A DNA stretch of 64,000 nucleotides from Antechinus flavipes. Its lineage: Eukaryota. The position numbers were made by a program, and so were the translations under genes. Positions within the stretch are counted from its first letter, which is position 1. Each line of letters starts with the position of its first letter. The stretch covers positions 248,062,001 through 248,126,000 of the forward strand of contig NC_067403.1 of the NCBI RefSeq assembly GCF_016432865.1. Reading direction: 5' to 3'. This document shows, piece by piece, positions 950-64,000 of this stretch. The notes beneath the pieces are model-generated. The model did not search any database. It was not told where the DNA came from and saw only the letters and a list, made by a program, of their open reading frames with translations.

Positions 950-1700
950 TTGCTAATTTTCTTCTCAATTCGACCATTTGGTGAATTGGTTCAACTCTAT
1001 ACTGTATTCTCTAGTTTGCTGATAATATTGCTGATTACACCAAGCCATATCTCAGTCTTGGAACACTCCCACCATTCTCTACTTTTTCTTCCATCCATAT
1101 GCTGGTGAACTAAAATGGGGAAAAGTATACAACCATTCTGAACTGAGTCAAGTAATTTGCTCAACTTCATCTGTGCCTTCATAGCTGCTTAAGCAATCCC
1201 ATCTCAACTTCCTTGTCAATCTACCATTCCATTCTAGACAAAGGCTTTTTGAAAGCTTTTTATCTTTCTTTAAACATCCCTTGGCTACCCTCTCACTCTC
1301 TTGCCTAAGAACCTTGCCTTATATTTTACAAAAAAAGATTGAGGCCATTCCTGTGAGCTTTCTTTTTTCCCATTCTCCTCAGTTCTTGTCACTGAGATGT
1401 CTCTGTGGTATCTTCAACTTCACTATCATCCCATGATTAAGTGGCCTTAGTCTTTCTCATGGGTTACCCCTTTACTTTTTCAAATTATCCTATTCCATCC
1501 CATTTCCTTCAACAATTTGCTTCCTTTTTAATCATCACTCTTTCTTTTATTTGTAATATCCTCCTCTTAAGTGGTTCATTCCCATTACCTACAAATAGGC
1601 ATGCATCTCCCCAATTCTAAAAATCACCACACTTAATTGTTGCATCCCTAGCATCAGCCTATAGCTTTTCTTTCCTTTTTAGCTTAATTCCTTTAAAACA
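950..1700 (+). mobile_element. L2 LINE fragment (paralog about 48760-49420)
   Basis: agaaccttgccttatattttaca...attgaggccattc resembles the L2 ORF2 3' region; degraded. Confidence 0.55.
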
Positions 1701-1708
1701 CTATTTAT

Positions 1709-1852
1709 GGGGAAACTAAAATGGAGCAGGGGGTAGAGTACCAGCCCTGAAGTCAAGAGAACTTGAGTTCAAATCTGGCCTCAAACACTTAATACTTCCT
1801 ATCTGTGTGATCCTGGGCAAGTCACTTAACCCCAATTGCCTCAGCAAATAAA
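1709..1852 (+). mobile_element. WSINE1-type tRNA/CORE SINE
   Basis: gccctgaagtcaagagaacttgagttcaaatc...gggcaagtcacttaaccccaattgcctcagc followed by an A tail. Confidence 0.85.
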
Positions 1853-1971
1853 GACCATGGAAAACAGGTGCCTTTACACTCTCTCTCCTCTCATTCTCTT
1901 CTTAATTTCTTCTACTTTGACTTCTGGCATCATTTCAGTGAAACTTCCCTCTCCAAAGTTAGCAGTGAAAA

Positions 1972-2721: not shown

Positions 2722-3657
2722 CTAAGCCTTATGAAGTCTTTTCCCCCATAAAACTTTCCTGAAAGCCACATGAATCTCTTTATTCCTCATGGTATAGACT
2801 AGAGGGTTCAACATGGGAATGATCATGGTGTAGAATATTGAAGTCATTTTGTCTGTGTCCATAGAATGGTTAGAGTTGGGTTGTAAGTACATAAAGATGA
2901 CTGTTCCATAAAATATGGACACCACAGAGAGGTGAGAAGCACAAGTAGAGAAGGCTTTCTGGCGGCCCTCAGTAGATTGGATCTTCAGGATGGCAGCAAA
3001 GATGAATGAATAGGAAATGCAGATAAATAGAAGTCCAAAGGTAGCAGTGAATCCTCCTAAGATAAAGAGTATCACTTCATTGATGTATACATCAGAGCAG
3101 GAGAGAGCCAGGAGAGGAGGGATGTCACAGAAGAAGTGATGGATGACATTGGATCCACAGAAGGAGAGGCTAAAGGTCTGTCCAGTGACAATAGCGGAAT
3201 TAAAAAATCCACTAACGTGTGCAATAATGGTCAGATATGTACATACACTCGATGTCATGATGGTGGTATAATGTAGGGGCCTACACACAGCTGTGTGTCG
3301 ATCATAGGCCATAACAGCCAGGAGATAAATTTCAGTGGTGACAAAACTTGAAAAGAAGAACATTTGTGCAGCACATCCATTGTAGGAGATAACCTTTCCC
3401 CCTGTGAGAAAACCAGCCATAACCTTGGGTGTGACAGCTGAGGAATAACCAAAATCTACTAGAGAGAGATTACTGAGAAAAAAGTACATTGGAGTATGCA
3501 AGCGGGAGTCCCAGGATATAATGACTACTATCCCCAAGTTCCCCACAAGGATGATCAGATAGATAATAGTGAATATTATCAGAAGGGGAACTTGAAGCTC
3601 TGGAGTATCTGTTATTCCTTTGAGAATGAACTCACTCACCTCTGTTCTGTTCTTCAT
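2722..3657 (-). CDS. OR5B: Olfactory receptor, OR5B subfamily, intact (OR-1, 311 aa)
   Basis: Full ORF with N-glycosylation site NRT and the motifs GN (TM1), [47 protein letters not shown] and [14 protein letters not shown] and PLHYTT.MT are OR5B-like. Symbol is subfamily level only; 1:1 orthology is not established. Confidence 0.95.
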
Positions 3658-8254: not shown

Positions 8255-8475
8255 GATTTAGTGGACAGAGCTAAGGACTTAAGTTTGAAGAAAATTTGGA
8301 ATAGAATTCTACCTCAGATACTTATAATCTATGTGAGCCCAAACAATTCATTAAATTTTCCCATTTTCAGTTTTTCTTTATGGAAAAATGTAATGACAGT
8401 TGTAGCACTTACCTTTTAGGATCATTATGAGTTTCAAATGAAATCATTGCTTTAAAGCATTTTGAAAACCCTAAA
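8255..8475 (+). mobile_element. MIR SINE (paralogs about 18565-18790 and 53575-53830)
   Basis: agtggacagagc...ctcagatactta...tagcacttacct...gagtttcaaatga...aaagcattttg. Confidence 0.75.
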
Positions 8476-9239
8476 GCAAAATATAAATAAAATATGTTAC
8501 TACTGAGCTTGAAACCATATCTTTTTTTAATTTTAAATCTGTTCCAAATTTCAACATCATAATTTGTACACGTGTGCCCTTATTATTATTCACTGATTTG
8601 TTGTTAAATGTTCATTATCATTAGTCTCTTCTCAGATTGCTTCTTTACTTAAAGCAAGACAATAAATGGGAAAAGCAGGAGCATGGTTTATAACAATGAC
8701 TGTCTTTTATGAGGACAATAATCTTGATTTTATGGTTGATACTTAGATTCAGAGTGATGAAATAATTTGCTATGATTTCACAGGTAAAAATTTTTTTAGA
8801 AATAAGATCTGAAACTAATCTTCCAGATTCCAGATTTAAAATCTTAAAACATAATGTCCTACAGTCCCAACAGATGAATTTTGCATTTTTCATAATCTGA
8901 ATGGCTCATGGAGAAAGGTTGATGGGCCTTTGTAAGGGAAAGATGGCCAGGCACCTTTACAGGGGTCAGGTCGTTGAAATTTTCGACTGAGAAAGGAAAT
9001 GAATATGATGAAGAAAGTCTCCCCTGATGCTAAGTATTCAAAGGTCTTTAGTTCTGGAGACATCATCCTTGGCCATTGCTGTTTCATGGAAGGCAGTAGA
9101 TTTAATGATCTTTCCTTGTGTTGAAAGACAAAATGAACAATGGAAACCAAATGAATGAGTGACTCAGACTCCTTCACTAGATTGGTCTCATAGCATTGTG
9201 CTCTATAAGAGATATATGTTATATAACTATGACTCAAGA

Positions 9240-9390
9240 TGTGGATTAGGGAGGGATTTTCTACAGACTTGGGAGTCTGTGCCCCCTTGGAGAAAATTGG
9301 CTCTATAGCCAATTAATAAACAAACCATTAAATTCTTCCCTGACCAGGGGGATCAAACTGATTGTCCATGGAGATTATTTCCCTATAACT
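9240..9390 (-). promoter_or_regulatory. Candidate promoter module of OR-1
   Basis: Non-repeat block homologous to blocks upstream of OR-3, OR-4, OR-6 and OR-7. Plus-strand motifs: ccttggaga 9285-9293 (O/E-like), cattaa 9326-9331 (homeodomain TTAATG on minus), ttccctgaccagggg. Confidence 0.65.
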
Positions 9391-10544
9391 TTGTTTTTCT
9401 TTGTTCATTGTTAGGGATGTAGAGCAGAAAAAGCCTTTGTTATTGGGCATCCTGACCTTGAGCTCCTAGCAATGGGACCTTGAACAAGGCACTTAACTAC
9501 TATTTGTTTGAACTTGCTCATTTGTCAAATAAGGCTAGCAGTCCTTCCCTGTGTAGCTTATAGAATTGTGAGGTTCAAATATCATACTGAATTATGATGT
9601 ACTGCAGGACAAAAAGTATTAAAAATTAAGAGTTCAGAGAGCCAGTTAAAGTCCTAGAGCTACCTCTTATTTATTAACTTTGTCACATTGTTTTCTCAAC
9701 CTCAGTTGGCCAATCTGTAAAATTATAACTGTACATCTTTACCCTTGCAAAGTCTCCTTAGGGACTATGTTCCTGAAGGATATATGCATATAAAGTTCTA
9801 GTAGAAGGAATACTATAGATTTAGTTTGATGAGTTCTAAGCTAAGTAGTTTACAAAATCTTTCTCATGGTATTCTGGGGACAAGATACAGAGAAGCAGGT
9901 TAGACATGAGCACACTTAGAATAAATTGGAACTGGATGAATGGCCATAACTGGAGAATAGCTAATGGCTCAATTTAACTCAAAAACTATACTCTAGTAGG
10001 GAACTTCAAGAATTGGTCTTGGCCCTGTGCTAGCCCACATCTTTTAGTAAGTATAAATATAATCCCTATTTCTAGATTTCTATAAAAAAGCAGTCTAAAT
10101 GGGTCTCTATCTCATATACAATCACAGCAAATCAATCTTGAGAAATCCTTTATTTGATTTTACAGAAAAAATCAAAATATTAAAAATATCAAACCCTATA
10201 GGAATCCCTATCCAAATACTGAAACAGCTAAAGCACCCAAAGAATTGATCAGTTGGAACCGAATTGAAGCTAGAGTTGCCATTATGGTACCATGCTGATA
10301 TCCTATTGAAATCCCTTTCTTCCACAGAAACCCTTGTAAGTTTCAGGACTACCTTATGATTTATATGCCTTCTTGTAGGTATTCCTACATTGGGTGTTAT
10401 TAAAGAAGTCACTTTCCACTGAATCTGCACTATCCAAGTAATTCACTGGTTTTGCTGTCCAAGTATGAGGCTGTGTAGGAATTAAATCATTGATCCTCTT
10501 TCTCAAAAATATATTGATGATTGATGGTGATGATGCTAATGGCA

Positions 10545-11164: not shown

Positions 11165-11282
11165 GAGGCCAGAGACAGGCAGAGACATAGAGAGAAACAG
11201 AGACAGAAACAGAAAGAGGCACAGAGAGAGAGATGAGGGAGGGAGAGAGTGAAATGAGATCAAGCCTAGAACCAGACGTACG

Positions 11283-11336
<54 letters not shown>

Positions 11337-11385
11337 GTGTGTGTGTGTGTGTGTAGGGAGGGATAAGGGAGGGAAGGAGAGAAAG
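11165..11385. repeat. GA-rich compound microsatellite including (GA)n(GT)n
   Basis: Direct reading; pure (GA)n at about 11286-11332. Confidence 0.95.
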
Positions 11386-11527
11386 TGCACAGCTCCTTTT
11401 CAATACTATCACAAAGGGTTTTTCCTCCAATGAAAATCTATCTCTTGGGATTGTCTTCAATTCACATAAAGACAGTCTTAGTCTAGGGCACTCAGGTTGT
11501 CTTGGGATAGTAGATATGTTTGATGGG

Positions 11528-12287: not shown

Positions 12288-13168
12288 TGGACAATAGGTG
12301 CCTTTATTCTCTCTCTTCTCTCATTCTCTTCTTAATTTCTTCTACTCTGATTTCTGGTATCATTTCAGTGAAATTTCCCTCTTCAAAAGTTAGCAGTTAA
12401 AATGGGGGAGAGAGAAAGGAAAGAACAGTAAAAAAAGGGAAAAGGAGAGAGGAGGAAGAAGAAAAATGGAAAAGGGATGGAGAGGAAGAGAAAGGGGAGA
12501 ATCCAGTTTACTTTTATTGACCAAAGGAAAGAGTAGAAACCAAGGAGAGTTTGGCTTCATAAAGCTCAATTATTAAATTATTTGGAAGATAAAATGAGTC
12601 TTTGTAATTCAGTGAGTAAGAAAATTTCATTTTATGTCATTATATCCCCAATTCCCTAGTACATACAGACTCTAAATTAATGTTTATTTGTAGATTTAGA
12701 GCTCTTAAAATGTAATAAAGTAAATCTATCACCTACTTCATCTTAATCATAAAATCACTAATTTTGAGCTGAAAAAGACTGAAATGTTTATCTAGTCCAA
12801 TACTTTCACTATGCAGATAAGGACATTAAAGCCCATTAAGGTGATTTGACTTGTCTAACTGAACATCAGAAGTAGGATTTGGACTGGGTGTTTTCACTTC
12901 CGCACTGCAATGTACTCATGGATATCTATTACGGATCTCTACAAATCAATGGTAGAGACTTTGGTATCATAGCTGGTAAGTGTTAATGTCAGCAACTGAA
13001 TCCATGTTTCCCCTCATTCTAAGTATAATCCCCTTTCCTCTTATATCACACTGTATCTAGAAAAGGAAGAACTGAGATTTAAGATAATTTATTTAAGATA
13101 ATATCATGACTTGGGGGCTAAAGTCTAGAGAATGATATTTCAGATTTTGTTTTCTCTTAAGCACAATG

Positions 13169-14097
13169 CTAAGCCTTATGAAGTCTTTTCCCCCATAAAA
13201 CTTTCCTGAAAGCCACATGAATCTCTTAATTCCTCATAGTATAGACTAGAGGGTTCAACATGGGAGTGACCATGGTATAGAATATCGAAGTCACTTTGTC
13301 TATGTCCATAGAATGGTTAGAGTTGGGTTGTAAGTACATAAAGATGACTGTCCCATAAAATATGGACACCACAGAGAGGTGACAAGTAGAGAAGGCTTTC
13401 TGGCAGCCCTTGATAGATTGGATCTTCAGGATGGCAGCAAAGATGCATAATTGGGATATACAGATAAAAAAGTCCAAAAGAGTACCAGCAAATCCTCCTA
13501 AGAGAATGAGTATCACTTCATTGATGTATATATCAGAGCAGGAGAGAGCCAGGAGAGGAGGAATGTCACAGGAGAAGTGATGGACCACATTGGAAATACA
13601 GAAGGACAGACTAAAGGTCTGTCCAGTTACAATAGCAGAGTTAAAAAATCCACAGACATGTGCAATAATGGTCAGACAAATACATACATTCGATGTCATG
13701 GTGGTGGTATAATGTAGGGGCCTACACATATCTCTGTGTTGATAATAGGCCATAACAGTCAGGAGGTAATTTTCTGTGATGACAAAACTTGAAAAGAAGA
13801 ACATTTGTGTAGCACATCCATTGTAGGATATGACCTTTTCCCCTGTGAGAAAATCAGACATGACCTTGGGTGTGACAACTGAAGAATAACCTAAATCTAC
13901 CAGAAAAAGGTTACTGAGAAAATAGTACATGGGAGTATGCAAGCAGGAGTCCCAGGAGATAATGGCTACTATCCCCAAGGTCCCCACAAGGATAATGAGG
14001 TGAACGTTGTGAGGAAAGGAACTTGAAGCTCTGGAATAGCTATCATTCCTGTGTGAATAAACTCATTCACCTCTGTTCTGTTCTTTATTGATGTCAT
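13169..14097 (-). pseudogene. OR5B: Olfactory receptor pseudogene, OR5B subfamily (OR-2), close paralog of OR-1
   Basis: Relative to OR-1: 10-bp frameshifting deletion near 14000, DRH changed to YQH, 6-bp deletion in CASHL (now CHL), and premature TAA at 13226-13228 in RNKE. ATG at 14097; ancestral stop at 13169-13171. Confidence 0.92.
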
Positions 14098-16660: not shown

Positions 16661-17053
16661 NNNNNNNNNNNNNNNNNNNNNNNNNNNNNNNNNNNNNNNN
16701 NNNNNNNNNNNNNNNNNNNNNNNNNNNNNNNNNNNNNNNNNNNNNNNNNNNNNNNNNNNNNNNNNNNNNNNNNNNNNNNNNNNNNNNNNNNNNNNNNNNN
16801 NNNNNNNNNNNNNNNNNNNNNNNNNNNNNNNNNNNNNNNNNNNNNNNNNNNNNNNNNNNNNNNNNNNNNNNNNNNNNNNNNNNNNNNNNNNNNNNNNNNN
16901 NNNNNNNNNNNNNNNNNNNNNNNNNNNNNNNNNNNNNNNNNNNNNNNNNNNNNNNNNNNNNNNNNNNNNNNNNNNNNNNNNNNNNNNNNNNNNNNNNNNN
17001 NNNNNNNNNNNNNNNNNNNNNNNNNNNNNNNNNNNNNNNNNNNNNNNNNNNNN
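16661..17053. other. Assembly gap (393 N)
   Basis: Direct reading. Confidence 1.
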
Positions 17054-18240: not shown

Positions 18241-20044
18241 CATTTTTCCTTATTTTCTTTTGAAAGTATATTTTCTATTTTTCAAGTTAGACATAAATTC
18301 CTTGAAGGCACATTTGGCTTGTATTCTCAAGACCAATGAATGGAATATTTAATTGAACTGTTGAATTTCAGTCAACACAATTAAATATTTCGATCTTACC
18401 TTGCCTATCTATAAGAGGATAACATTTATATTAAATAAAATCATAAAGTATTTACAAAGACGGGGCTGTAAAATAGAGTTGTTTTTTTTCCCCTTTATAT
18501 ATTTTGACAATGATATGTGATAATGATGAGACTACTCTGTAAAGCATATGAACAAATTTATTGAGGCAGTTAGGCTTAGTGAATAGAGCTAAGGACTTAA
18601 ATTTGAAAAACACTTGGGATAAAATTGTGCCTCAGATACTTAATATCTATGTGAGCTTGAATAATTCATATAAATTTCCCATCTGGAAAATGGAGATAAT
18701 GACAAATGTAGCACTTACCTTTCCGGGTCATTGTGAGTTTCAAATGAGACCATTACTGTAAAGCATTTTGAAAAGCCTAAAGCAAAATATAAACAAAAGA
18801 TGTCACTATTGAGCTTAAAACCATTTCTTTTCTTAATTTTAAATCTGTCTCAAACTTATGATTTGTAGACAATATGCCCTTACTTTTATTCACTGATCTG
18901 TTGCTAAATGTTCATTATCATAAGTCCTCTCAGATTGCTGCTTTACTTAAAGCCCAACAATAGGTGGTGAAAACAGGAGCATGGAGCATGGTTCATAATT
19001 AATAATTGTCCTTTATAAAACCTGTAAAGTTTGCAAAGCATCTTCTGTATTTTATCTTATTTGAACCTCACAATAAGCTTATGAGGATGATTTATACATG
19101 TTGTTATCTTAATTTTATGGTTGATACTAAGACTCAGAGTGATGAAATAATTTGCCTATGCTTTCACAAGTAATAATTTTTAGAATCAAGATCTAAAACT
19201 AATCATTAAGATCCCAGATCCAAAATCTTAAAGCATAATGCCATACTATCCCCAAGGTGAGTTTTCAAATCTTAAATTGGATTTTTCAGAACCTGACTGG
19301 TTCATGGAAAAAGGTTGATGGGTTTTTGTAGGGGATAGATGGTCACACACTTTTACAAGAGGTCCAGGACTTGAAACCTAAGACCAATGAAGTTGAATAT
19401 GATGAAGAAAGTCTCCTCTAGTACCTGTCCTAAATCTGCCTCTTATTTATTAATTTAGTCTTATTGTTTTCTGTGCCTTAGTTTCATGATCTGTAAAATT
19501 GTGATAATTAAAAATGTCTATCGTTCCTCTTGCAAAGACCTTATTAACTATGTTCCTGAAGATTACATGGATATAAAGGTCTGATAATCTAATGATTCAA
19601 AGGCATACCATAGACATAGTTTAATGAGTTCTAAGCAAAGAAGTTGACAAAGTCTCTCTTGCTAATATGAAGACAAGATATAGAGAGATAGGTGGGAAAT
19701 TAGACTCTAGTGGAGAACCCCAAGAATCTGTCTTTAGTCCTGCAGTCAATATTTTTATCATCATCAGAATGTCCCTATTTCTAGATTTTTCTGAAAATTG
19801 GTTTAAATTGGTCTCCATCTCCATTTTCTTCTCATACAAATGGGTCTCCATATCCTAGATGCAAAAGCAGAGCATGATTCAATCATTTATGGAACTAAGT
19901 TAACATTGAGAAATCCTTTATGTCATCTTAGAGAAAAAAAATCAAAATATGCAAAAATCCTCACAAGATAAGCAAATGCAGAAACATCTAAACCACCCAA
20001 AGAATTGTCCAGTTAGGACAGAATTGAAACTAGGGTTGATATCA

Positions 20045-25096: not shown

Positions 25097-26041
25097 TTAT
25101 ATATCTAATGGATATTTTTTCCCAGTGGCTTTTCTAAAAGCATTCTTGACTTCCTTGTTCCTCAAGCTATAGACTAAAGGATTTAGCATGGGAATGATTA
25201 TAGTGTAGAATACTGATGCCATTTTATCTGTGTCCATTGAATGGCTTGAGCTGGGCTGAAAGTACATGAAGATGATTGTCCCATAAAAAATGGACACAGT
25301 TGTGAGATGGGAAGCACAGGTAGAGAAGGCCTTATGCCGCCCTTCAGAAGAGTGAATCCTTAGGATGGCAATGAAAATGAATACATAGGATGTCACTATT
25401 ACCAAGAGGGTGAAAGATACATTAAATCCTGCTAAAATAAAGACCACCATCTCAGTGATATGGATATCAGAACAGGAGAGAACCAAGAGTGGAGGAATGT
25501 CACAGAAAAAGTGATGGATCACATTGGAACCACAAAAGGAGAGGTGAAAGGTACATCCGATGTTAATGGATGACTGAAGGAAGCTACAGATATAAACCCC
25601 AATCGCCAACCGAATACAAACGCTCAGTGTCATGGTGGTGCTATAATGTAGGGGCTTACATACTGCTGCATGGCGATCATATGCCATCACAGCTAGAAGA
25701 AAACAATCCACACTTGCAAAGGTCGTGAAGAAGAACATTTGTGCGGCACATCCATTATAAGAGATGACTTTGTCCCCTGTGAGGAATCCAGCTATTACCT
25801 TGGGAGTAACAGCAGAAGAATATCCCAAATCCACCAAAGACAGATTACTGAGGAAAAAATACATTGGGTTATGGAGATGGGTGTCCCAGGAGATCAGCAC
25901 TACCATACCAAGGTTTCCCAACAGAGTGATCAAATAAATAATAGTGAAAATTATGAAGAGAGGGATCTGAAGTTCTGGGGTATCTGTTAACCCCATAAGA
26001 ATGAATTCATTCACTTCTGAGTGATTTTCCAAAGATGCCAT
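25097..26041 (-). CDS. OR5B: Olfactory receptor, OR5B subfamily, intact (OR-3, 314 aa)
   Basis: Full ORF: NHS glycosylation site, [53 protein letters not shown]. Confidence 0.95.
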
Positions 26042-27425: not shown

Positions 27426-28724
27426 AATGCATGCACACAGATATGCATCTGTTTATAGATAAATACATATAGATATATGTGCATGTGTTTATATATGAGT
27501 CAATATGTCTATATTTATCTATCTATAGAAATTCTGGAAGAAGAAAGGAAATGTGTCATGGAAAATATTTTGATAAAGATCAATGGAATCAGAAATAGGA
27601 ACAGCATTGTCATCAGAGTTGACTAGGGATAATATGATCAAGAAGAGAAAATGAGTGAGGAATTTGAAAAACACCACAAGCCTGGACAAAGTGTATTTTC
27701 AATATGTTATTTCATCATCTTTTGAAGCAGGGAATAGGAAAGTCCATTTTAACATCTCATTCTAGATTAGATCTAGGAGTTTCACTTCACATTATAACAA
27801 ATAGTTCAAAGTGACTATTGCTAGCTTGGTGCTAAGATAGTTATATCAATCCCATAAATGCTACTTTTGCACTCACCTGATCTGATAACTGAGCCAATTA
27901 GATGTAGACATATCCTTAAAATGTGGTCTCCTTATTGCATTTAATATTAGGTGGTTTTGAGTCCCCGTATATAAAATCCTTATGAGCAAATAGAAGACAA
28001 ACATATTTTCCTTTTTCATAATATCAGTTGCTAATGTTTCTATTTGCACTTAAAGTTTTGCAAAATACTTTACACACTTCATCCCGTTTGGTACTCACGA
28101 CAATCCTGGAGGTAGGTGCTATTATTATTCTTACTTTACAGATGAGAAAATCAAGACATTTAGTGCACACAATTGTTAAATGTTTGAAAGTAGATTTAAA
28201 TTTGGATCTTCTTGATTCTAAATCCAAATCTCTATGCACTTCACTAATAATATGTTAGAAAAAATGTAGGCCTAGTAGTCCAGAAGATTTGGGTCAAAAT
28301 TCTACCTCAGACATTTTGCAAGCTGTATAGCCCTCAGAGAATCCCTTAATTTTTCTTATTCTATCTGAAAACCTATAAAATGAGGACATAAATAATAATT
28401 GCATCTTTCTTATAGAATCATGAGATTAAAATGAGTCATCAGATGCAAACCATTATTAAAGGTAAGTTGAAATGATTGGAGGCAGGACCGATGTCTTATA
28501 TAAACTTTGTATCACCTTCAGAGTTTAACAGAATGCTTTGTGAATGGTGTATCCTTATATAAATATTGTAAATATTTTTTTAAACATTTCACTAACATTA
28601 AGCAATGCTGACATACTTTGCTGCTGTTCATCATTTTTCTCTAATTTGTTTCTACTAATCCTGTTTCATCTGAATAATGTATAATCTTCAAGGTCTGTAT
28701 TTCAGTGATGTATTTATCATCCCA

Positions 28725-28947: not shown

Positions 28948-29067
28948 TGATACACTTTTTCAAAATGCCCTTTTACTTAGTCCAAGACAATCATCCTGAG
29001 AAGGTGTGATGTGGCAAATAATAACTGACATTTTAATAACATTTTAAAATTTGAAATTATCTATTTT

Positions 29068-29195
29068 GGGGGCAACTAGATGTTGCAGTGGACAGAGTTC
29101 TAGCCCTGAAGACAGGAGGACCTGAGACACTTATTAATAGCTGTGTGGCTCAGGCCAAGTCATTTAATCCAAATTGCCTCACAAAAAAAGGAAAA
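29068..29195 (+). mobile_element. WSINE1-type SINE with internal deletion
   Basis: ggggcaactagatgttgcagtggacagag...gccctgaagacaggaggacctgag...aaattgcctcac plus A tail. Confidence 0.8.
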
Positions 29196-29714
29196 AAAAT
29201 ACATTTCTTTAATTAGTTATTACAGATATTATGATCACAGTATTATAAATGAGGAAAATGAGGTTGAACACACACAATTTGTATCAGAGAGAAAACACGC
29301 AGATCCATTTGTTCCTAGAATCATTCAGCAATGCCTTATCCTTCAAATATATCAAGGAAATGTGGGTTGAGGTTCTTAGAACTTACCAATCTAGAGAAAT
29401 AAAGATAGAGCTCAGGATGGTAGAAAAAGACAAGCACTTTCACATTAGCTCTTCCTAATCCTAGGAAGGAACTTATTCTGTTGAAGAAACTACTCCTTCA
29501 TCCCTAATACTGTGTTCAATGGTCCCTATTCCAAGAGAAATTATTTTTAGTCATTGCTTCTTTGTTTTGAAATGGAGTTATTGAATTTATCTTCTGCATA
29601 GTTTCAAGATTAGTAATGATTGAATGATTGAGAGGACTTTTTCCTCCAGGTGGTTCCTATAGAAATTAACTCTAATAGTGCATCATTTAGAGGTGAGTGG
29701 CTGAAGGTGGGAAT

Positions 29715-29880
29715 CAAGGAGAGGTTTTATAAAGATCTAGGCATGAAATTACTCTTAGGAGACCATGCCACCTTGGAGAAACCTGGCAGTTCTTCATTCG
29801 GCTCATGAACAAAACAAGCCATTAACTCTGCTGTACCCATGGGGACCAAGTCTTGATCATCTAAAGAGACCATGCTCTCA
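29715..29880 (-). promoter_or_regulatory. Candidate promoter module of OR-3
   Basis: ttttataaag at about 29725 (TATAAAA on minus), ccttggaga 29771-29779, cattaa 29820-29825, cccatgggga 29836-29845 (O/E consensus CCCNNGGG). Confidence 0.7.
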
Positions 29881-30770
29881 CAGGTACTTTCTTAGTGTCA
29901 TTTTAAATTCATTGAAGTTAGTTATTCTTAGTTTATTCAGAAAAGAAGCTCTAGAGGAAGGTATTTAAAGGCATTACTTCAGATTATATAATTTTCATAG
30001 GTATGAATAAAGAATTGTTTGTTAATCAAAGAATGGATAAGTGATATTTAAAAAAAAAATTAAAAAAACTTTTGCATGAACAAAATTAACATAGCTAAAA
30101 TAAGAAGAAAAACAGCTGATTGGTGAAAAACAGTTACATCAAATATCTCTGGAAAGGGTGATGGTTGTAGTGGTAGTTATTGTAGGAGTAGTAACATTGA
30201 CAATTAACATTTACATGGCACAAATATTTTACATATATTATCTCAATTGATTTTGAATTGCTGAAAGTATCTACCACTAGGAACCTGATAGCAACTCAAG
30301 ATGTTACCAATAATAATAAAATGTTAATTTCTATTGCTTGCCATTTGATGTCCTAAGATTAAGGAATGAAATACAAAACAGAATAGGCATTCAGGAACTT
30401 GAGGTCCAGTCTCAGTTTCATGCACACAAACACATATTCTTGCTGCCATGTGCTTGAGCTATAGCAACTATGGCTTCTGAAGCCAGTGGAAAATGAGAAG
30501 AGAAAATCGCTTCTCATCTTGTTGGAAGCTCAAGAGAAAGATGACAATAAATCTGTCTCAACATAGAATAGCTCAAAAGATATGGGAGGCTCAATCTTTC
30601 TACAATTCTATAGCATAATGAAGTTTGGGAGGTTCTTCTACAAGAACTCACCCTCAATGATATTCCTTGACTAATCCTCTCTGATACATTCTCATACTCA
30701 GATCCATTTCCCATGGGGAAACATGAAACCAATTAGGTTTTGCTATATTATCTCCTGATTAGCTAGGTGG

Positions 30771-30990
30771 TACAGTGGATAGAACACAGGGCTCGGAATC
30801 AGGAAGATTCATCTTCCTGAGTTCAATTCCAACCTCAGACATTTACTAGCTCTGTGACCCTGGACAAATTGCTACCTCTGTTTCCTCATCTGTACAATGA
30901 GCTGGAGAAGAAAATGGCTAAGCACTCAAGTATCCTTGCCAAAAAATCCCAAATGACTTCATGAAGTTAGAAGAACAACTGAATGATAAT
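30771..30990 (+). mobile_element. CORE-RTE SINE (WALLSI1/MAR1-like)
   Basis: agctaggtggtacagtggatag...atcttcctgagttc...gagctggagaagaaaatggc...agtatccttgccaaaaaatccc. Confidence 0.8.
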
Positions 30991-37100: not shown

Positions 37101-37177
37101 ATTATTGTCATCCTCTTGGATGAAATTATGAAATCTTTCAGTGATTTATTGTTTGACCCACTCATTTTTTTTAGAAA
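34154..37177 (-). mobile_element. 5'-truncated L1 (about 3.0 kb, ORF2 plus 3' UTR) with TSD
   Basis: Poly-T tail at about 34151-34185; ORF2 remnants in the ORF track (e.g. [13 protein letters not shown]); TSD tattgctcatt at 34143-34153 and 37178-37188. Confidence 0.9.
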
Positions 37178-38335: not shown

Positions 38336-39313
38336 CTAGCTGGAATGAGATACATGTTGTCCAGTAGGGAGAAGTAAAGATGTGATGCCCAAGAATGAAG
38401 ATCTAAAGCTTTTCCTGAAAGCATTCTTGACTTCCTTGTTCCTCAAGCTGTAGACCAGTGGGTTCAGCATTGGAATAACCATAGTATAAAACACAGAAGC
38501 CAATTTGTCTATATCCATGGAGTGACTAGAGCTTGGTTGCAGGTACATGAAAGTGATTGTCCCATAGAATATGGACACTGCTATGAGATGGGAAGCACAG
38601 GTAGAGAAAGCTTTCTTCCGGCCCTCAGCAGAACGGATTCTCAGAATGGCAGCAAGGACAAAGAGATAAGATGTGAAGATGACCATGAGGGCAAAAGAGA
38701 TATTGAATCCCCCTAATATAAAGAGCACCCACTCATTAATGTGGATATCAGAGCAAGAAAGAGCCAGGAGAGGGGGAATATCACAAAAAAAGTGATGAAC
38801 TATATTGGAACTACAGAAGGAGAGGCTAAAAGTATCTCCTACACTCACAGAGGAAGTCAAAAAGCCACAGATGTAGGAACCAACAGCTAACCGTGTACAT
38901 ACTCCTGATGTCATTGTCATAGTATAATAAAGAGGCTTACACACAGCCACATGACGATCATAGGCCATGGAAGCTAGGAAGAAACTTTCAACAGTAGTGA
39001 ATGTTGCAAAAAAGAACAATTGTGTAGCACATCCATTGTAGGAGATGACCTTATCCCCTGTGAGGAGTCCAGCCATCACCTTGGGAGTAACAGCTGAGGA
39101 GTAGCCAAAATCCACCAGAGAGAGGTTACTGAGAAAGAAGTACATGGGGCTGTGGAGACGGGAGTCCCAAAAGATCAGGGCTACCATTCCCAGGTTTCCC
39201 ACCAATGTGATGATATAGATTAGGGTGAATATTATAAAAAGGGGAATCTGAAGCTCTGGGGTATCTGTTAGTCCTAGAAAAATGAATTCATTAATCTCTG
39301 AGCCATTCTCCAT
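38336..39313 (-). CDS. OR5B: Olfactory receptor, OR5B subfamily, intact 7TM with altered C-terminal tail (OR-4, 325 aa)
   Basis: Full ORF: NGS site, [53 protein letters not shown]. Confidence 0.93.
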
Positions 39314-40244
39314 AGATACTACTGGGAAGTTAGATTATTTACCTGTAACAAGAAAGAAAATAAAAGAAGAATGAATTCAGACATCAAAATGACTCTGAGT
39401 CAGAAAATATCACCCCAAATGTAGATATCTGTTGTGAATGGTGGAGATACATGTGTGAGGGAAGAGAAGGACCTAAATGATTTTCATGGAAAAATTGAAC
39501 TATTAATGACTGAGTTTGGGTATCTGTCGGTTTAAGTACTGCTGAAGTCACCTAATTGTGTTATAATCTAGCAAAATGCTCTATGTCTTTCCAACATAAT
39601 ATTATGAGAAACTTTATCAAATAAATTCTAGGTAGATTATTAGCAGTATTCCCCTGAACAATAACAGCCAGCATTTATATAGCACTTTGAGATGTCCAGG
39701 CACTTTATATGTTTTTCCCATGTTTTCTTGTATGTAGATTGTTTACATAGTTTTGTTTGCTTCTTGTTTTGCTATTAGATGTCGAGGTCTTTGAAAATAG
39801 GCCCTGTCTTTTGCCTCTTTTTGTATCCTCAGCACTTAGCAAATTTCCTAGAACATAGTAGGAACTTTATGAATTGTTTGTTGAGTGATTCTGCAGATAA
39901 CAATGGTAGGAGGTAGGCACTATTATTATCTTGATCTTTCAGATGAAGATACCAAGTGTGAGAAATTGCCACGCCCAGAGTCACACAGTTAGTAAAAATC
40001 TGAAGCAGGATCTAAATGCAGGTTTTCCTGAATCCAAGGCCATTGCTGTACTAGTATGTTTCTGAGTTACCTAGTTACAATGTATGATCATAGAAGAAAA
40101 ATTGTGCTCTGGGTAAAGTAAAATAAAATAAAATCATGACTGGAAGATAGAGGCAGTATTTTGTAGTACATAGGGCAATGGAATTAGAATCAGAAAGAAT
40201 TAGGCTTGAAGTCTACCAAAACTATTCTGTGGCCAATTCTTTTA

Positions 40245-41002: not shown

Positions 41003-41604
41003 CATTAACTCTTATAAGTCTCAAAACAACCCTCTAAATTGAATATCCTTGGTGTTGTTAGACTCATTGATGGCAGAAAATGAGGCTCAGAGATTTAAGT
41101 GTCTTGAAATGATCTCAAAGGAACAAATATCAAAGACAGAATTTAAATCAAAGTCATTGTGACTACAAGTCTAGAATGTTATTCTCTATTCCAAGTCTCC
41201 TTCCAAATAAACTATCAAGTCTTGAATTAAATGTCCCAGAACTTACCTGGCATGTAGAGAAATATGGATTTGATTCTAAGAGGAGAGATGGTCAAAAACT
41301 TCACAAATGGATCTTGGAGTTTTCGTCCCAAGCTCAGGAAAAAGGCAAACCTACTAGAAAAAAAAATGTTTTCCTAGTCCTTGGTCTTCAAATGTTCTTA
41401 GATCTGAAGGGACCACATCTGATCTATATGAATGATAGTGGAGTTGTGATTTTGTCTCTAGCTCAGGGATGAATAATATTAGAAATTAATAGAGAACAAA
41501 TGAATGATTTAGAGACTCAGGTGATGCTGACCCATAAAGTGGTAGAGCAATGTTCCTTATTTATGAAACATCAATGTTAATAGAGGAAGACAAGGATCAG
41601 AAAG

Positions 41605-41775
41605 TCACTTTATACAGATTTGGGAGCCTTTCAGCTTTTAGGAGATGGTTCCCCCTCAGAGACACTTGGCAGCTCTATTACCAATTTGTGGGAAAAAACA
41701 ACAAGAAGTCATTAAATTCTGCTCTGATCATGGAGGACACACTTTGATTTTCCAGGGAGACCATTTTCTCATGGG
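41605..41775 (-). promoter_or_regulatory. Candidate promoter module of OR-4
   Basis: ctttatacag at about 41610 (TATAAAG on minus), ccccctcagag 41651-41661, cattaa 41710-41715, ttccagggag at about 41750. Confidence 0.7.
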
Positions 41776-42145
41776 TGTTTTGTCATTCTTAGTTTGTTGC
41801 TGGCAAAGTGAGGTAAAGAAAAAACTATGGACAATGGGATACTAAAACTGGGATTATTATTCTACTTCTACCACATCCCACATATATGACCCTGCAAAAG
41901 TCATGATCCATCTTCAAGTCTTAGTATATTCATCATTAAAATGGGAATAATTACCTCTGTTCTGTTTACATTGAAGAGGTTGTGATGTAGCTCAAATGTG
42001 ATATTACTCATGAAAGCCAACATAGGGTAGAGAAAAAAGCATTGGATTTGGAGTTAGAGGATGTGGGCTGGAGTTTTAGCTCACTGTGAAACTTTAGGCA
42101 AGTTCCTTACCATCTCTGAGTTTTGTGTTCCTCAACAGTAAAATA

Positions 42146-53170: not shown

Positions 53171-54644
53171 TAGGAAGCCATGTTAGAGACAGATTTGAGT
53201 GGCCTTAAATGTTATAATAAAGGATTTACATTATATCCCAGATACATTTTCTGATCTTAAAGTAAGACATAGATTCTTTGAGGGAACATTGGTCTTGAAT
53301 CCTTAACATATCTACCAGTGAATGGAATATAGTAGGCACTTGATGAATTAAATTGAATGGGATTGTTGAATTGCAGACAACCCAATTAAACCTGTGGGTC
53401 TCACCTTCCCTGTGTATAAGAAAATAATCACATTTATATTAAATTAAAAAATTGTTTATAAAGAAGACAGTCTAAAATTTAAAAGGTTAGAAAAGTCATC
53501 TTATTTCCCTATAGTTTTTTACACTTATATATGATAATGATAAGACACTTTTCTACAAATGTGTTGATGCAGATAGTCTTAGTGGATAGAACTAAGGACT
53601 TAAATTTAGAGAACATTTAAAATATATTCCTCCCTATTTATTTGCATTGTTGAGGCTCACTTAGGTAAAGATACTTATTACTTATATGAGCCTTAACAAT
53701 TCAAATACATTATCTTGTTCTCAGTTTTCTCACTTAGAAAATGGAGATAATGACAATTGTAGCACTTACCTTTCAGGGTTATACTGAGTTTCAAATGAGA
53801 CCATTGCTCTAAAGCATTTTGAAAACTCTAAAGAAAATTTAAATAAAACACTTTAGTACTGAGACATGAACCCATCTCTTTTCCTGATTTTAAATCTGCT
53901 CCAAATTTTAGCATCATGATCTGTACAAATATTCATTGATTTGTTGATAAATGTTTATTATCATGAAAAAACTCCTCGATTACCCCTTTGCTTAAAGCAA
54001 GATATGGCGGCAAAAGCAGAAGCATAATTCATAATAATGATTGTTCTTTATAAGGCTTTTAAAGTATACAAATTCTGTAATGCATCTTATTTGAATCTCA
54101 CAATAAGCTTATAAGGATGATGTTACATATGTTGTCAATTTGATTTTACAGCTGATACTAACAGAGTAATGAAATAATTTGCCTGTGGTTTCACAAGTAA
54201 CAATTTTTAGAACTAAGACCTTAATCTAGTCTTCCAGATTCTAGATAAAATCCTAAAGCATAATGCCACATTGTCACCCAGATGAGTCTTAGAATCTTAA
54301 ATTGGACCTTTCAGGGTATGACTGACTCATGTCATTGTAGGGAAAAGATGGTCAGACAATTCCCAAAGGGTCCAGGGCTTGAAATCTAAGACTCAGAAAG
54401 AAAATGAATATGATAAAGAAAGTTTCCTCTAGTACCTGGTAATAAGTATTTAAAGGTTCATAATTTTGTAGAGATCATCCTTGGTCATTATTGCTTCATG
54501 GAAAGCAGCAATTATGGTCATCTTTCTGCCTGTTGAATATCAGAATGAACAAAGGAAATTAAATGAGTAAGTGACTCAGACTCTTTTAGGTTGATCTCAC
54601 AGCATTGTGTGTTGAAAAAGACATTTTAGATGTGTGACTGAAAA

Positions 54645-54800
54645 TGGAGATTAGGGAGGGGCTTAATACAGATCCAGGAAAACGTTTCCTTGGAGATAAT
54701 TGGCTTTTCAGCCAAATAATATAAAAAACAAACCATTAAAGTCTTCTCTGATCATGAGGAGCAAACACTGATTGTCCATGGGGATCATTTTCTTCTAATT
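54645..54800 (-). promoter_or_regulatory. Candidate promoter module of OR-6
   Basis: ccttggaga 54688-54696, cattaa 54734-54739, gtccatgggg at about 54775; colinear with 9240-9390. Confidence 0.65.
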
Positions 54801-55074
54801 ACCTTTATCTTTCTTAGTACTTTGTTAGGGATGTAAAACACAAGGAACCTTGGTTATTAGGAATTCTGGCCTTAAGCTCTTAGCAAAGTGACCTCAAGCA
54901 AGACACTTAACTGGTATTTATTTGACCTTATTCATTTGTCAGATAAAGTTAATACTCCTTGTCTTTATAGCTTATAAATTCTTGTGAGTTTCAGATATAC
55001 TGAATTATGAAAGAGACAATATATTGCAGGCCAAAAAGTATTAAAAGCTAGAGTTCAGAGAATCAGTTGGATCT

Positions 55075-61540: not shown

Positions 61541-63924
61541 TTTAATGTATATGTGTATATATAGTATAGTGTGTGTGTACATGTGCAGACTTGGGCATGT
61601 GTGTGTGGCTAGGGAGAGAAATGCTGACTTGGTTTCTCATTTTGTGGGGAAAATTGGTTCTTGGTTTTTCTATCACTGTGACCGTGGACAAGCCATCATA
61701 CTTCGATCTCACTTCTCTCATATGTCAAAAAATAAAATTCATGGCATCAACCTCATAAGGCTGGTCTGAAGATAGAAAGAGATAATTCTATTAAGTACTT
61801 TGCCAACCTGAAAACTCCATATAACTGTTGGTTACTGTTACTATTTAATTTCTCACACTATACTACTACTACTACCAGTGCTATCAGAAATCCCCTGAAG
61901 TCTTTACTCCTGGGATACTACAAACCTCTATTTGCTCATTAATAAAGAAAAGATAGTAAACTAGATGACCTCTGAGATCCTTTCCATTTTTGAATTGATG
62001 ATGCTATGATACTTTGTTAATTTCAAAGATTTTCATTACTCTTTATAACACTACACTAAAAGATTCTTTTAGTGTAGTTAATTTTGAATTTATGACTGAA
62101 GACAAAATAAATAATTAAATTTTATCTCATAAAATATTAGAGAAATAGAGAAAAATCTAATTTTGCAACTAATACAACCAAGGTTTTCCTTTATAATAAT
62201 ATAATAATAATTCTTTATAATATAATATATTTATAATAAATATATAATAATTTATTAAATAGATTTAGATTTAAACTAATATTTATAGTAATGATGGTCT
62301 CATATAGGCTAGTCTTGAGCTATTTAAAAATTTAATACATTGAATGAACTATATGTAGACATAGTTTATGACAGTCCTTTTCAGGGATGTCCTCAAGACT
62401 TGGTCTTCTAGAAGTCCCTTATCTAGGAAAAACCCTTCTTGGTCACTAGGGCAGATAAAATGATTGACTTTATAGTGAGAACTACCTAGATGTTGGTGGG
62501 TAGCATTATGTGGAAAGAGCATTTGATTGGGACTCTGAAGGCTCAGGTTCTGATGTTACTTATATTTGCACTGATTTCTTCTTTGATTTCACAAAAGTTA
62601 ATGCTGGAGGGTCTCCTACTCTTTTAGAAAATGACATTATTTCTTGAATAATATTCAATAATATTTTTCAATCTCCTTCAATAAGGAGATCACACAGGGA
62701 TTGTAAGGAAAATGTTTGCTGAGAACCAAATGCTGTAGATACCAAACTTACCATCCTTTGCAGAGGTTATTGGGCTTGTATTTGATCGTGGATGAACAAG
62801 TACTAGGAAAAACAGACACAGATAAAGGAATTTCCAGTATGGTACATGTGATGTAGTGAAGAGAACTTTGATCTTTGCTTCAAGAAAATATGGATTTAAA
62901 TCCTCTTCAGACAGTTGTTACTGTATGTCTCTGGACACATCACTAAAGTTACTCAAGTTATTGTAAAAGGGCAATAAAAACGTTATTTATCTCATACAGT
63001 TTGGGGGAGATTAAAATAAAAAAAATTGATTAAAAAAACCTGCTAGTTTTAATTGCTTTGAGAGAAATGATTAGATTTTTCCTAAACTTTGTTATCTATT
63101 CCATCCTTCAAGAATTGCATATGGGGACCTGCACACAGTATCCCCTTTATCAACATTATTTAATCATGTGCTATTTATATATATCTATATATATAGATAT
63201 ATATATAATCATGTGCAAATTATAGTACTATAAGAACACCAGTCCCTCAAATGCCTCCTTTAATTAATTGAAGGATAATGACCTTGAAAAGCTTGCAAGT
63301 AGGAGATAATAACTCTTGTTTATAGATTACTATGATGTTTGAACACAATTTACATACGTAAACTCATTTGAGCCCCAACACAACCCTATGAGATAAGTAC
63401 TAGTGTAATTATGGACAGTTTCTGATAAGATCATGGAAAAAGTCAAACAACTTACCCATGGTGAAATAGTGAATTAGTGTCTATGGCAGAAAAGGTTTTT
63501 ATCTAAGGCTTACTGCTTCCAGGTTCTGTAATATTTCCTCTATATCATGTTGTACATGAACACTATGGTCTTTGATTGTACATCCTAGAACCTAGCTAGC
63601 TTGATTATAGAGAAAAGTGGCTAGAACTGCAAAGAGGGGAATTAACCAAGAATTTTACATTCCAAATTTGATATAAAGTCCAAAGCCTAGAAAGCATAAG
63701 ATCCTATTGGAGAAATTCTTTGCTAGTCACTGAGGAAAAGAGTTCAATTGTTCTTAATGATAGAGAAGTCAATTCTGGCTTCATAGAGGGTACCCTATTA
63801 TCCATTCAGCTCAGCTCCAGGAAACAAAAAAGGAATAAATGAATGAGTCAATGCCTTAGGGAATTTGACCCACAAACAGATTCCACATCATTGAGCCCTT
63901 TACTGAAATGTTTCAAGTAGCTAG

Positions 63925-64000
63925 AGTTAGGGAAGAACCTGGAACTTTATACAGATTTGGGAGTCCTGCAGCTCTGGGGAGATGGCTCCCTTGGAGATTT
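63925..64000 (-). promoter_or_regulatory. Candidate promoter module of OR-7 (cut by window end)
   Basis: actttatacagatttgggag matches the OR-4 module at about 41607; ccttggaga 63989-63997. Confidence 0.6.

What the first reader, a model, noticed from the sequence alone, without database searches (positions are those of the whole stretch)
9240..9390. One conserved non-coding module upstream of every intact receptor (TATA-like + O/E + homeodomain)
A non-repeat core of about 150-170 bp recurs in the same orientation at 9240-9390, 29715-29880, 41605-41775, 54645-54800 and 63925-64000+, i.e. 2.3-5.6 kb upstream of five quite divergent genes whose introns otherwise do not align. Plus-strand order is (t/c)tttata.ag, cc(c/t)tggaga, tggc..tct, cattaa.tct, cca(t/g)gg.ga. 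Weaker homology extends about 400 bp toward the gene (aatgaatga, agatggtca). On the sense strand this gives O/E (EBF) - homeodomain (Lhx2-type TAATG) - O/E - TATA, the known grammar of OR promoters. It is a ready-made, probably unannotated marsupial OR5B promoter with motif spacing preserved.
Basis: partly seen in the sequence, partly recalled or inferred. Interest (0 to 1): 0.75.

Follow-up and report, generated by a model that had tools for sequence, protein, structure and literature searches.

The report
Shared promoter block of smell-receptor genes
Each of the five intact smell-receptor genes in this marsupial gene cluster has, 2.3-5.6 kb upstream, the same old non-coding block of about 200-600 bases. 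It is most likely their inherited promoter plus untranslated first exon, an ordinary and already known kind of element that no transcript data confirm here.

Summary
A block on the gene (minus) strand occurs exactly five times in the 64 kb. There is one copy 2.3-5.6 kb upstream of each intact OR5B-like gene, and no copy anywhere else.

Profiles built from two copies find the other three at E 1e-7 to 1e-20, against background E >= 0.2. A ~620-bp deletion has removed the block upstream of the one full-length pseudogene.

Between the old paralogs (dS 0.95-1.6), only the coding exon and this block still align in gene order. Simulated neutral DNA is undetectable from K = 0.8, so the block evolves slower than neutral.

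Read in gene direction, the block holds:
- two or three TCTCC-type O/E-like sites;
- a kept TAATG(G/A);
- a TTGGC half-site;
- a TATA box, good in three copies and degenerate in two;
- an invariant A 33 nt further on;
- in two copies, a GGTAAGT donor about 335 nt later.

Every coding exon starts with a good acceptor.

The best reading is ancestral promoter plus non-coding exon 1 (confidence about 0.7).

- Copies 1 and 4 are young duplicates whose introns align throughout, so there are four independent lineages, not five.
- Motif spacing varies by up to 33 bp.
- The O/E sites are two mismatches from the published consensus.

No RNA or cross-species DNA could be obtained. The scan has already reported similar modules in other clusters of this genome.

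The parts
9201..9401 (-). Core block, copy for gene g1 (CDS 2722-3657)
   Evidence: nhmmer E 1.5e-51; found by the g3+g4-only profile at 7e-18
29683..29900 (-). Core block, copy for gene g3 (CDS 25097-26041)
   Evidence: nhmmer E 5.6e-61; found by the g1+g5-only profile at 3e-18
41568..41793 (-). Core block, copy for gene g4 (CDS 38336-39313)
   Evidence: nhmmer E 4.1e-61; found by the g1+g5-only profile at 7e-20
54614..54820 (-). Core block, copy for gene g5 (CDS 49891-50874)
   Evidence: nhmmer E 5.6e-53; young duplicate of the g1 copy
63889..64000 (-). Core block, copy for gene g6 (CDS 58025-58975). Cut by the window end; only the TATA and two O/E-like sites are visible.
   Evidence: nhmmer E 1.1e-21; 20 of 20 bases identical to g4 around the TATA box
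41609..41614 (-). TATAAA box of g4. Homologous sites: 29726-29731 (g3, TATAAA), 63946-63951 (g6, TATAAA), 9258-9263 (g1, TAGAAA), 54663-54668 (g5, TATTAA).
41581..41581 (-). Predicted transcription start of g4: an A in a loose YYANW context 33 nt after the first T of the TATA box. Same column in the other copies: 9230, 29698, 54635, 63918. Prediction only.
   Evidence: this alignment column is invariant in all five copies
41709..41715 (-). Homeodomain-type TTAATGA of g4. Homologous TTAATGG sites: 9325-9331, 29819-29825, 54733-54739.
   Evidence: kept in all 4 copies that reach this far
63987..63997 (-). Proximal O/E-like site (TCTCCAAGGGA type), kept in all five copies. Homologous sites: 9282-9294, 29770-29780, 41651-41661, 54686-54697.
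   Evidence: 2 mismatches to TCCCYNGRGAR
41748..41760 (-). Distal O/E-like site of g4, the best match in any copy (TCCCTGGAAAA, 1 mismatch). Homologous sites: 9362-9375, 54774-54785 (TCCCCATGGA), 29860-29875 (weak).
9297..9312 (.). Palindrome TTGGC-N6-GCCAA (NFI-like, or two CCAAT boxes) in g1; also at 54700-54715 in g5. The arms are kept while the spacer differs. Only the TTGGC/CTGGC half is kept in g4 and g3.
41247..41580 (-). Putative non-coding exon 1 of g4, about 335 nt, ending at donor CAG|GTAAGT (G at 41246). The g3 equivalent is 29387-29697, with donor TTG|GTAAGT at 29386.
   Evidence: the g1-g4 homology ends at 41248
8889..8907 (-). Homologous donor column in g1, where the GT is lost (CAGATT). 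It is also lost in g5 (54310-54328), weak in g6 (TAG|GTTCTA, G at 63591) and still CAG|GTT in pseudogene unit g2 (19290-19300).
39334..39351 (-). Splice acceptor before the g4 coding exon (AG ends at 39343, 29 nt before the ATG). Other acceptors: AG at 3687 (g1), 26062 (g3), 50886 (g5), 58987 (g6).
19419..19427 (.). Junction of the ~620-bp deletion in pseudogene unit g2. It removes the counterpart of g1 9033-9650: the whole core block, the TATA box and most of putative exon 1.
13163..14087 (-). Pseudogene g2. Its start codon is ATA, it has a 10-bp frameshifting deletion near 14000, a 6-bp deletion, and a stop at codon 293.
   Evidence: Pfam 7tm_4 on the remaining ORF

Best explanation
The block is the ancestral proximal promoter plus the untranslated first exon of this OR5B-like subfamily. 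It was copied along with each gene by tandem duplication. It has since been held under moderate purifying selection, while the rest of each 2-5 kb leader intron decayed beyond recognition.

Inferred mechanism:
- The roughly 200 bp upstream of the TATA box carry two or three TCTCC-type O/E-like sites, a TAATG(G/A) homeodomain core and a TTGGC half-site.
- In olfactory neurons these would be bound by EBF-family, LIM/other homeodomain and possibly NFI factors.
- TBP at the TATA box sets initiation about 30 nt downstream.
- The transcript runs through a non-coding exon of about 310-335 nt (g3, g4) and splices to the acceptor 11-29 nt before the ATG.

Shown here: the recurrence, orientation and one-per-gene placement; conservation above neutral; the acceptors; the TATA/+33 A geometry; the donors in g3 and g4; the deletion in the pseudogene unit.

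Inferred, not shown: transcription itself, the exact TSS, which factors bind, and which donor g1, g5 and g6 use.
For: 1. Five copies, all in the sense orientation, one per intact gene and none elsewhere in 64 kb.
2. The genes are real ORs. Names and orthologs are OR5B2/5B12-like.
3. Age. g3, g4 and g6 have 88-93% identical orthologs in other marsupial orders, and g4 has one even in a didelphid. The paralogs are only 69-78% identical, with dS 0.95-1.62. The copies have therefore been separate since before the marsupial radiation.
4. Between deep paralogs, the only same-order, same-strand matches are the coding exon and this block. The remaining hits are interspersed repeats in either orientation.
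5. Neutral simulation: 0 of 100 replicates give an HSP at E <= 1e-8 once K >= 0.8. The observed values are 1e-10 to 2.5e-19.
6. Acceptors precede every ATG. TATAAA occurs in three copies with an invariant A at +33. GGTAAGT donors sit at one homologous column in g3 and g4, and the g1-g4 homology stops there.
7. O/E-like sites at <=2 mismatches number 20 against 2.9 expected in the 230 bp upstream of the TATA boxes. There is a modest local GC rise.
8. The pseudogene unit has lost the block.
9. Published OR promoter features match: introns in the 5' UTR, O/E and TATA enrichment near the TSS, homeodomain sites (PMC3247239); about 300 bp of promoter is sufficient, and NFI sites occur in some ORs (PMC12547500).
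Against: - There is no transcript evidence.
- No cross-species DNA could be fetched.
- In the young pair g1/g5 the block (71% identity) is no better conserved than the flanking intron (70-85%).
- The TATA box is degenerate in g1 and g5, and both have lost the ancestral donor.
- The O/E-like sites fail the published consensus at <=1 mismatch in four of the five copies.
- The enrichment statistic counts homologous and overlapping sites, so its P value is inflated.
- A first exon of 310-335 nt is on the long side.
Confidence: 0.7

Rival explanations
1. The block is a conserved cis-regulatory element of these genes, such as an upstream or intronic enhancer or an alternative promoter. The main core promoter and TSS lie elsewhere.
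For: The conservation and the O/E-like and homeodomain-like content would fit an enhancer equally well. g1 and g5 have a degenerate TATA box and no donor at the ancestral column. The only strong donor shared by g1, g2 and g5 lies 850-900 nt downstream, in a MIR-like element.
Against: The TATA box with an invariant A at +33, and the GGTAAGT donors about 335 nt further on in g3 and g4, form a promoter-plus-exon geometry. Homology continues through the putative exon and stops at the donor. No second conserved block exists between this block and the acceptor in the deep pairs.
Confidence: 0.12
2. The copies belong to an old interspersed repeat (a transposon fragment, possibly exapted) that landed, or was carried, upstream of each gene. 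They are not an ancestral promoter.
For: Deep-pair identity of 54-67% is the same range as independent MIR-like copies in this window (59-64%). The clean absence of about 620 bp in the g2 unit could look like an empty site. Genome-wide copy number could not be tested.
Against: There is no further copy on either strand in 64 kb, whereas real repeat families here occur in both orientations. All four independent lineages are sense-oriented, one per gene; a crude chance estimate is about 0.01. No tRNA-like head, terminal inverted or long terminal repeats, or protein remnant was found. Similarity is not star-like: g4-g6 is much closer than g3-g6. g1 and g5 share the block at the same place as part of one duplication, so its absence in g2 is a deletion.
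Confidence: 0.08
3. The block is a neutral remnant of the duplicated unit. It is still alignable by chance or because gene conversion occasionally homogenised it, and it has no function of its own.
For: The young pair g1/g5 shows no excess conservation.
Against: At dS 0.95-1.62, neutral DNA should be undetectable: 0 of 100 simulations at K >= 0.8. The surrounding 2-5 kb indeed are undetectable. Conversion confined to a block 2-5 kb from the coding exon in four lineages is unparsimonious. Identity of 54-67% is far below what recent conversion would leave.
Confidence: 0.07

Closest known systems
Mouse/human class II odorant receptor proximal promoters (O/E + homeodomain + TATA within about 300 bp of the TSS; Young et al. 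2011 PMC3247239; review PMC12547500 citing Vassalli 2002/2011, Clowney 2011, Plessy 2012)
   Same: Both lie a few kb upstream of a single coding exon, separated from it by a 5'-UTR intron. Both are AT-rich with a small GC rise. Both carry O/E-like and TAAT-core sites within about 200 bp upstream of a TATA box.
   Different: No TSS has been mapped here. The kept O/E-like sites are TCTCC-type, two mismatches from TCCCYNGRGAR. The homeodomain core is TAATG(G/A), not TAATTA/TAATTG. Two copies have a degenerate TATA box.
Paralog-conserved OR promoter regions within one cluster (Hoppe et al. 2003, mOR262 family, cited in PMC3247239 and PMC12547500 but not readable here) and subfamily-conserved V1R promoters (PMC1955453)
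   Same: In both cases tandem paralogs share an alignable upstream block containing the promoter and first exon, while the introns diverge.
   Different: This is a marsupial OR5B-like subfamily, and the divergence between copies is deep (dS about 1-1.6). The comparison with Hoppe 2003 rests on citations and my own knowledge, not on its text.
Promoter modules reported by this scan in other OR clusters of the same genome (s1-189924, s1-198810)
   Same: Same kind of object: one conserved non-coding block upstream of each of five tandem OR genes.
   Different: They are on different DNA, a different cluster or chromosome piece. Sequence relatedness to this block could not be checked; the search by sequence returned nothing.

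Membership tests
Odorant receptor proximal promoter + 5' non-coding exon | Lies upstream of the coding exon on the gene's strand, within about 10 kb, with an intron in the 5' UTR | tested here: met
   All five blocks are on the minus strand, 2.3-5.6 kb upstream of the ATG. A Y-tract plus CAG acceptor lies 11-29 nt before each ATG.
Odorant receptor proximal promoter + 5' non-coding exon | Transcription start mapped by RNA (RACE, CAGE, RNA-seq), with a splice junction to the coding exon | not testable with these tools
Odorant receptor proximal promoter + 5' non-coding exon | O/E (EBF) site matching TCCCYNGRGAR within a few hundred bp upstream of the TSS | tested here: inconclusive
   At <=1 mismatch, one site in g4 only, and the window total is at chance: 19 against 19.5. 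At <=2 mismatches, 20 against 2.9 expected in the five promoter stretches, but the sites are homologous and overlapping.
Odorant receptor proximal promoter + 5' non-coding exon | Homeodomain (TAAT-core) site near the O/E sites | tested here: met
   TTAATGG/TTAATGA is kept in the 4 copies that reach that far. The motif is generic: TAATG alone is not enriched (4 against 3.5 expected).
Odorant receptor proximal promoter + 5' non-coding exon | TATA box about 30 nt upstream of the start (present in a subset of OR promoters) | tested here: inconclusive
   TATAAA in g3, g4 and g6; TAGAAA in g1; TATTAA in g5. An invariant A lies at +33. The TSS itself is unknown.
Odorant receptor proximal promoter + 5' non-coding exon | Splice donor ending the first exon | tested here: inconclusive
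   GGTAAGT at one homologous column in g3 (29386) and g4 (41246). It is weak in g6 and lost in g1 and g5.
Odorant receptor proximal promoter + 5' non-coding exon | Evolves slower than neutral DNA | tested here: met
   For deep pairs, detected at E 1e-10 to 2.5e-19 although dS is 0.95-1.62, and neutral simulation gives 0 of 100 at K >= 0.8. Not visible in the young pair g1/g5. Orthologous conservation was not testable.
Interspersed repeat / transposon | Many copies, on both strands, in unrelated contexts | tested here: not met
   Within the window there is no other copy on either strand; the best background hit has E >= 0.2. Genome-wide count is not testable with these tools.
Interspersed repeat / transposon | Structural hallmarks: terminal repeats, target-site duplications, tRNA-like head, coding remnant | tested here: not met
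   No tRNA-like sequence. No Pfam hit on the two stop-free stretches. No shared terminal inverted or direct repeats. No Rfam family.
Interspersed repeat / transposon | Match to a curated repeat consensus (Dfam/Repbase) | not testable with these tools
   No repeat library is on hand.

The most novel reading that the evidence does not exclude
The block is a subfamily-specific promoter code for OR5B-like genes: three TCTCC-type sites, TAATG and a TTGGC/NFI-like element. It has been kept as one unit since before living marsupials diverged. It sets where and how often these receptors are chosen. Loss of the block by the 620-bp deletion was the event that silenced g2 and led to its decay.
Probability: 0.15. 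Interest if true: 0.5.

Novelty: new member of a known kind. Interest (0 to 1): 0.3.

Why it matters
The block gives testable positions for the starts, first exons and promoters of five marsupial smell-receptor genes. Such features are rarely annotated, because receptor transcripts are scarce outside the nose. It also offers a natural contrast: four old lineages that kept the block against one pseudogene that lost it.

It does not change the picture of how these genes are controlled. Conserved promoter blocks among clustered receptor paralogs, with O/E, homeodomain and TATA motifs, have been described in mouse and human since the early 2000s. This scan has already reported the same kind of module in other clusters of this genome.

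Tried and rejected
- **Cross-species DNA.** Three look-ups of orthologs (Gracilinanus, Petaurus, Vombatus) returned gene positions but no DNA, because the assemblies were too large. All cluster members of g1, g3, g5 and g6 come from the same kind of large NCBI assembly, so I did not try further.
- **Sequencing runs.** No RNA holder was found; DNA holders came from six coded organisms.
- **Metagenome scan.** An exact 19-mer from around the TATA box gave 21 contigs. All match only over the seed (19-27 nt), so they are chance hits.
- **Other scans.** Rfam and tRNA scans found nothing. Pfam on the two long stop-free stretches inside the blocks found nothing, and these stretches are not shared between copies. 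A repeat search found no terminal repeats.
- **Second collinear match.** g1 8289-8623 matches g3 28282-28600. It proved to be a MIR-like repeat, not a second conserved regulatory block.
- **Young pair as a test of constraint.** Uninformative: the block is no better conserved than its flanks.
- **Earlier findings by sequence.** The search returned nothing.
- **Hoppe 2003 (PMC403809).** Not held in the library.

Full report
**Setting.**
- The window holds a tandem cluster of olfactory receptor genes, all on the minus strand.
- The intact ORFs are 2722-3657 (g1), 25097-26041 (g3), 38336-39313 (g4), 49891-50874 (g5) and 58025-58975 (g6). Each matches Pfam 7tm_4 at E 1e-51 to 1e-58.
- 13163-14087 (g2) is a pseudogene. 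Its start codon is ATA, it has a 10-bp frameshifting deletion, and it has a stop at codon 293.
- 47639-48055 is a 3' receptor fragment inside a duplicated segment.
- The window's proteins sit on the same 264.6-Mb record as named Antechinus flavipes OR5B2/5B12-like proteins. This agrees with earlier notes of the scan.

- Aligning the five stated stretches gives a real alignment.
- A profile of the core finds exactly five hits, all on the minus strand: 9201-9401, 29683-29900, 41568-41793, 54614-54820 and 63889-63998. Their E-values are 1e-21 to 1e-61, and the next hit has E > 3.
- To avoid circularity I built profiles from two copies only. The g3+g4 profile finds g5, g1 and g6 at 2e-18, 7e-18 and 1e-7. 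The g1+g5 profile finds g4, g3 and g6 at 7e-20, 3e-18 and 0.008. Background is E >= 0.2.
- Distances from the TATA-like motif to the ATG are 5.6, 3.7, 2.3, 3.8 and 5.0 kb.

**How independent the copies are.**
- g1, g2 and g5 belong to young segmental duplicates whose whole units align at 68-86%. g1-g5 has dS 0.37.
- In that pair the block (71% in the core) is no better conserved than the flanking intron, which is 70-85% in 100-bp windows.
- The informative comparisons are among four lineages: g1/g5, g3, g4 and g6. Their paralogs are 69-78% identical in protein, with dS 0.95-1.62.
- g3, g4 and g6 have 88-93% identical orthologs in other marsupial orders. For g4 this includes a didelphid. These lineages therefore split before the marsupial radiation. 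The date itself is my own knowledge, roughly 60-80 million years or more.

**Constraint.**
- Between deep-paralog units, sensitive BLAST finds two same-order, same-strand matches: the coding exon with about 50 bp before the ATG, and the block.
- The block matches are g1-g3 399 bp at E 7e-14, g1-g4 608 bp at 7e-12, g3-g4 189 bp at 1e-10, and g4-g6 689 bp at 2.5e-19.
- Everything else is interspersed repeat, occurring in both orientations. This includes a ~150-bp SINE-like family and MIR-like elements.
- I evolved the g4 block neutrally with substitutions and indels. All 100 replicates were detected at K 0.37, 60 of 100 at K 0.6, and 0 of 100 at K 0.8-1.4, using the same BLAST settings at E <= 1e-8.
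- The block therefore evolves clearly slower than synonymous sites. From 54-67% core identity, I estimate roughly half their rate.

**Anatomy in gene direction**.
- Distal O/E-like site: ATGGTCTCC..GGA. The best copies are TCCCTGGAAAA in g4 and TCCCCATGGA in g5.
- A second O/E-like site: TCCCCATGG type.
- TTTAATGG (TTTAATGA in g4).
- A TTGGC half-site. In g1 and g5 it is part of a palindrome TTGGC-N6-GCCAA, whose arms are kept while the spacer differs.
- A proximal TCTCCAAGG site, present in all five copies.
- In g3, g4 and g6 only, an extra 18-20 bp with another TCTCC site.
- Then CTCCCAAATCTGTATAAAG, which is 20 of 20 identical between g4 and g6.
- The TATA box is TATAAA in g3, g4 and g6, TAGAAA in g1 and TATTAA in g5.
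- An A in a loose YYANW context lies 33 nt after the first T of the box in all five copies. This gives predicted starts at 9230, 29698, 41581, 54635 and 63918.
- Motif spacing is similar but not fixed: TATA to TAATG is 62-95 bp.

**Exon structure.**
- Every coding exon is preceded by a polypyrimidine tract and CAG, 11-29 nt before the ATG. An upstream exon is therefore expected.
- Weaker homology runs about 350-650 bp downstream of the TATA box.
- At one homologous column, g3 (29386) and g4 (41246) have GGTAAGT. The g1-g4 homology ends at 41248.
- That gives putative first exons of about 310-335 nt, with 4-6 ATGs and 34-36% GC.
- At the same column, g6 has a weak TAG|GTTCTA and the g2 unit still has CAG|GTT. 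g1 and g5 have lost the GT.
- The only strong donor shared by g1, g2 and g5 is AAG|GTAAGT at 8412, 18718 and 53769, inside a MIR-like element preceded by a good acceptor. Whether it is used is unknown.

**Factor assignments.**
- The published O/E matrix consensus is TCCCYNGRGAR (Young et al. 2011, PMC3247239).
- At <=1 mismatch the window has 19 matches against 19.5 expected, and only one lies in a block.
- At <=2 mismatches the five 230-bp stretches upstream of the TATA boxes hold 20 matches against 2.9 expected from the rest of the window. These sites are homologous and partly overlapping, so the nominal P value is inflated.
- The recurrent core is TCTCC, not TCCC.
- TAATG(G/A) is a generic homeodomain core.
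- TTGGC-N6-GCCAA differs by one base of spacing from the NFI consensus as I know it.
- 'O/E - homeodomain - O/E - TATA' is therefore a fair description of the order. Binding by EBF, Lhx2 or NFI is inferred, not shown.
- The architecture matches what is published for OR promoters: introns in the 5' UTR, O/E and TATA enrichment close to the TSS, homeodomain sites, an AT-rich context with a GC rise, about 300 bp being sufficient in transgenes, and NFI sites in some ORs (PMC3247239, PMC12547500, PMC1955453). The GC rise here is modest: 0.41-0.43 against 0.33-0.37.

**The pseudogene.**
- The g2 unit aligns with g1 and g5 on both sides of the block, but it lacks the counterpart of g1 9033-9650. The junction is at 19419/19427.
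- g1 and g5 carry the block at the same place, and so do the older lineages. This is therefore a deletion in g2, not an insertion elsewhere.
- It removed the core, the TATA box and most of putative exon 1. Whether it preceded or followed the coding lesions cannot be told.

**Rivals.**
- *Transposon.* This reading is disfavoured. There are no further copies, all copies are in the sense orientation, no structural hallmarks were found, and similarity is not star-like. Without a repeat library or genome-wide search it is not excluded, and deep-pair identity is in the same range as independent MIR-like copies.
- *Enhancer with the TSS elsewhere.* This would fit the motifs. It fits the TATA/+33/donor geometry less well.
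- *Neutral relic.* This is contradicted by the simulation and by the decay of the surrounding intron.

**What could not be done, and a disclosure.**
- No RNA run holds the locus.
There is therefore neither transcript nor cross-species read evidence.
- By oversight, two later calls scanned the whole window by reference and so included those places: Rfam and tRNA. Local scripts that compared the window with itself also included them. Nothing was found at those places.
- Ortholog DNA could not be fetched.

**Verdict.** The recurring block is real. It is most likely the inherited promoter and first exon of this receptor subfamily (confidence about 0.7). It is a new member of a known kind, and this scan has already reported similar modules in other clusters of the same genome (s1-189924, s1-198810). 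Interest is modest.

Noticed in passing
window 8412 (donor G), 18718, 53769; about 8409-8470 and homologs: A MIR-like element in the leader intron of g1, g2 and g5 carries a good acceptor (TTTTGCTTTAG|G) and, about 58 nt later, a perfect donor (AAG|GTAAGT). It is the best conserved stretch of the g1-g5 intron alignment (83-87%). It may be an exonised repeat serving as a 5'-UTR exon.
   Followed up: partly
window 19419-19427: A ~620-bp deletion in the pseudogene unit removes the whole promoter block.
   Followed up: yes
window 34161-38827 and 42545-48055: A segmental duplication of about 4.7-5.5 kb at 76-85% identity. It copied the 3' half of g4 and its downstream DNA, leaving an orphan 3' receptor fragment at 47639-48055 with no promoter block.
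   Followed up: partly
window 1700-1870, 29061-29224, 30763-30888, 40268-40389, 42146-42306, 56070-56245: A ~150-bp SINE-like repeat family occurs in both orientations. It served as an internal example of how a true interspersed repeat behaves in this window.
   Followed up: partly
window 56902-57318 (array 56835-57435); related 11170-11423: A purine-rich minisatellite with a 28-bp unit and about 15 copies at 87% match, downstream of g6. It accounts for the 204-codon TTG 'ORF' at 56805-57419.
   Followed up: partly
window 55080-55400: A ~320-bp insertion in the g5 unit relative to g1 and g2, just upstream of the block and its adjoining MIR-like element.
   Followed up: no
window 9450-9600 and 9650-9730: MIR-like sequence directly upstream, in gene sense, of the g1 block. 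The same arrangement occurs in g5. The alignable promoter therefore ends where a repeat begins.
   Followed up: no
window 16661-17053: An assembly gap (N run) lies in the g2 unit. It is not at the position of the missing block, so the deletion is not a gap artefact. I left the gap unfilled.
   Followed up: yes
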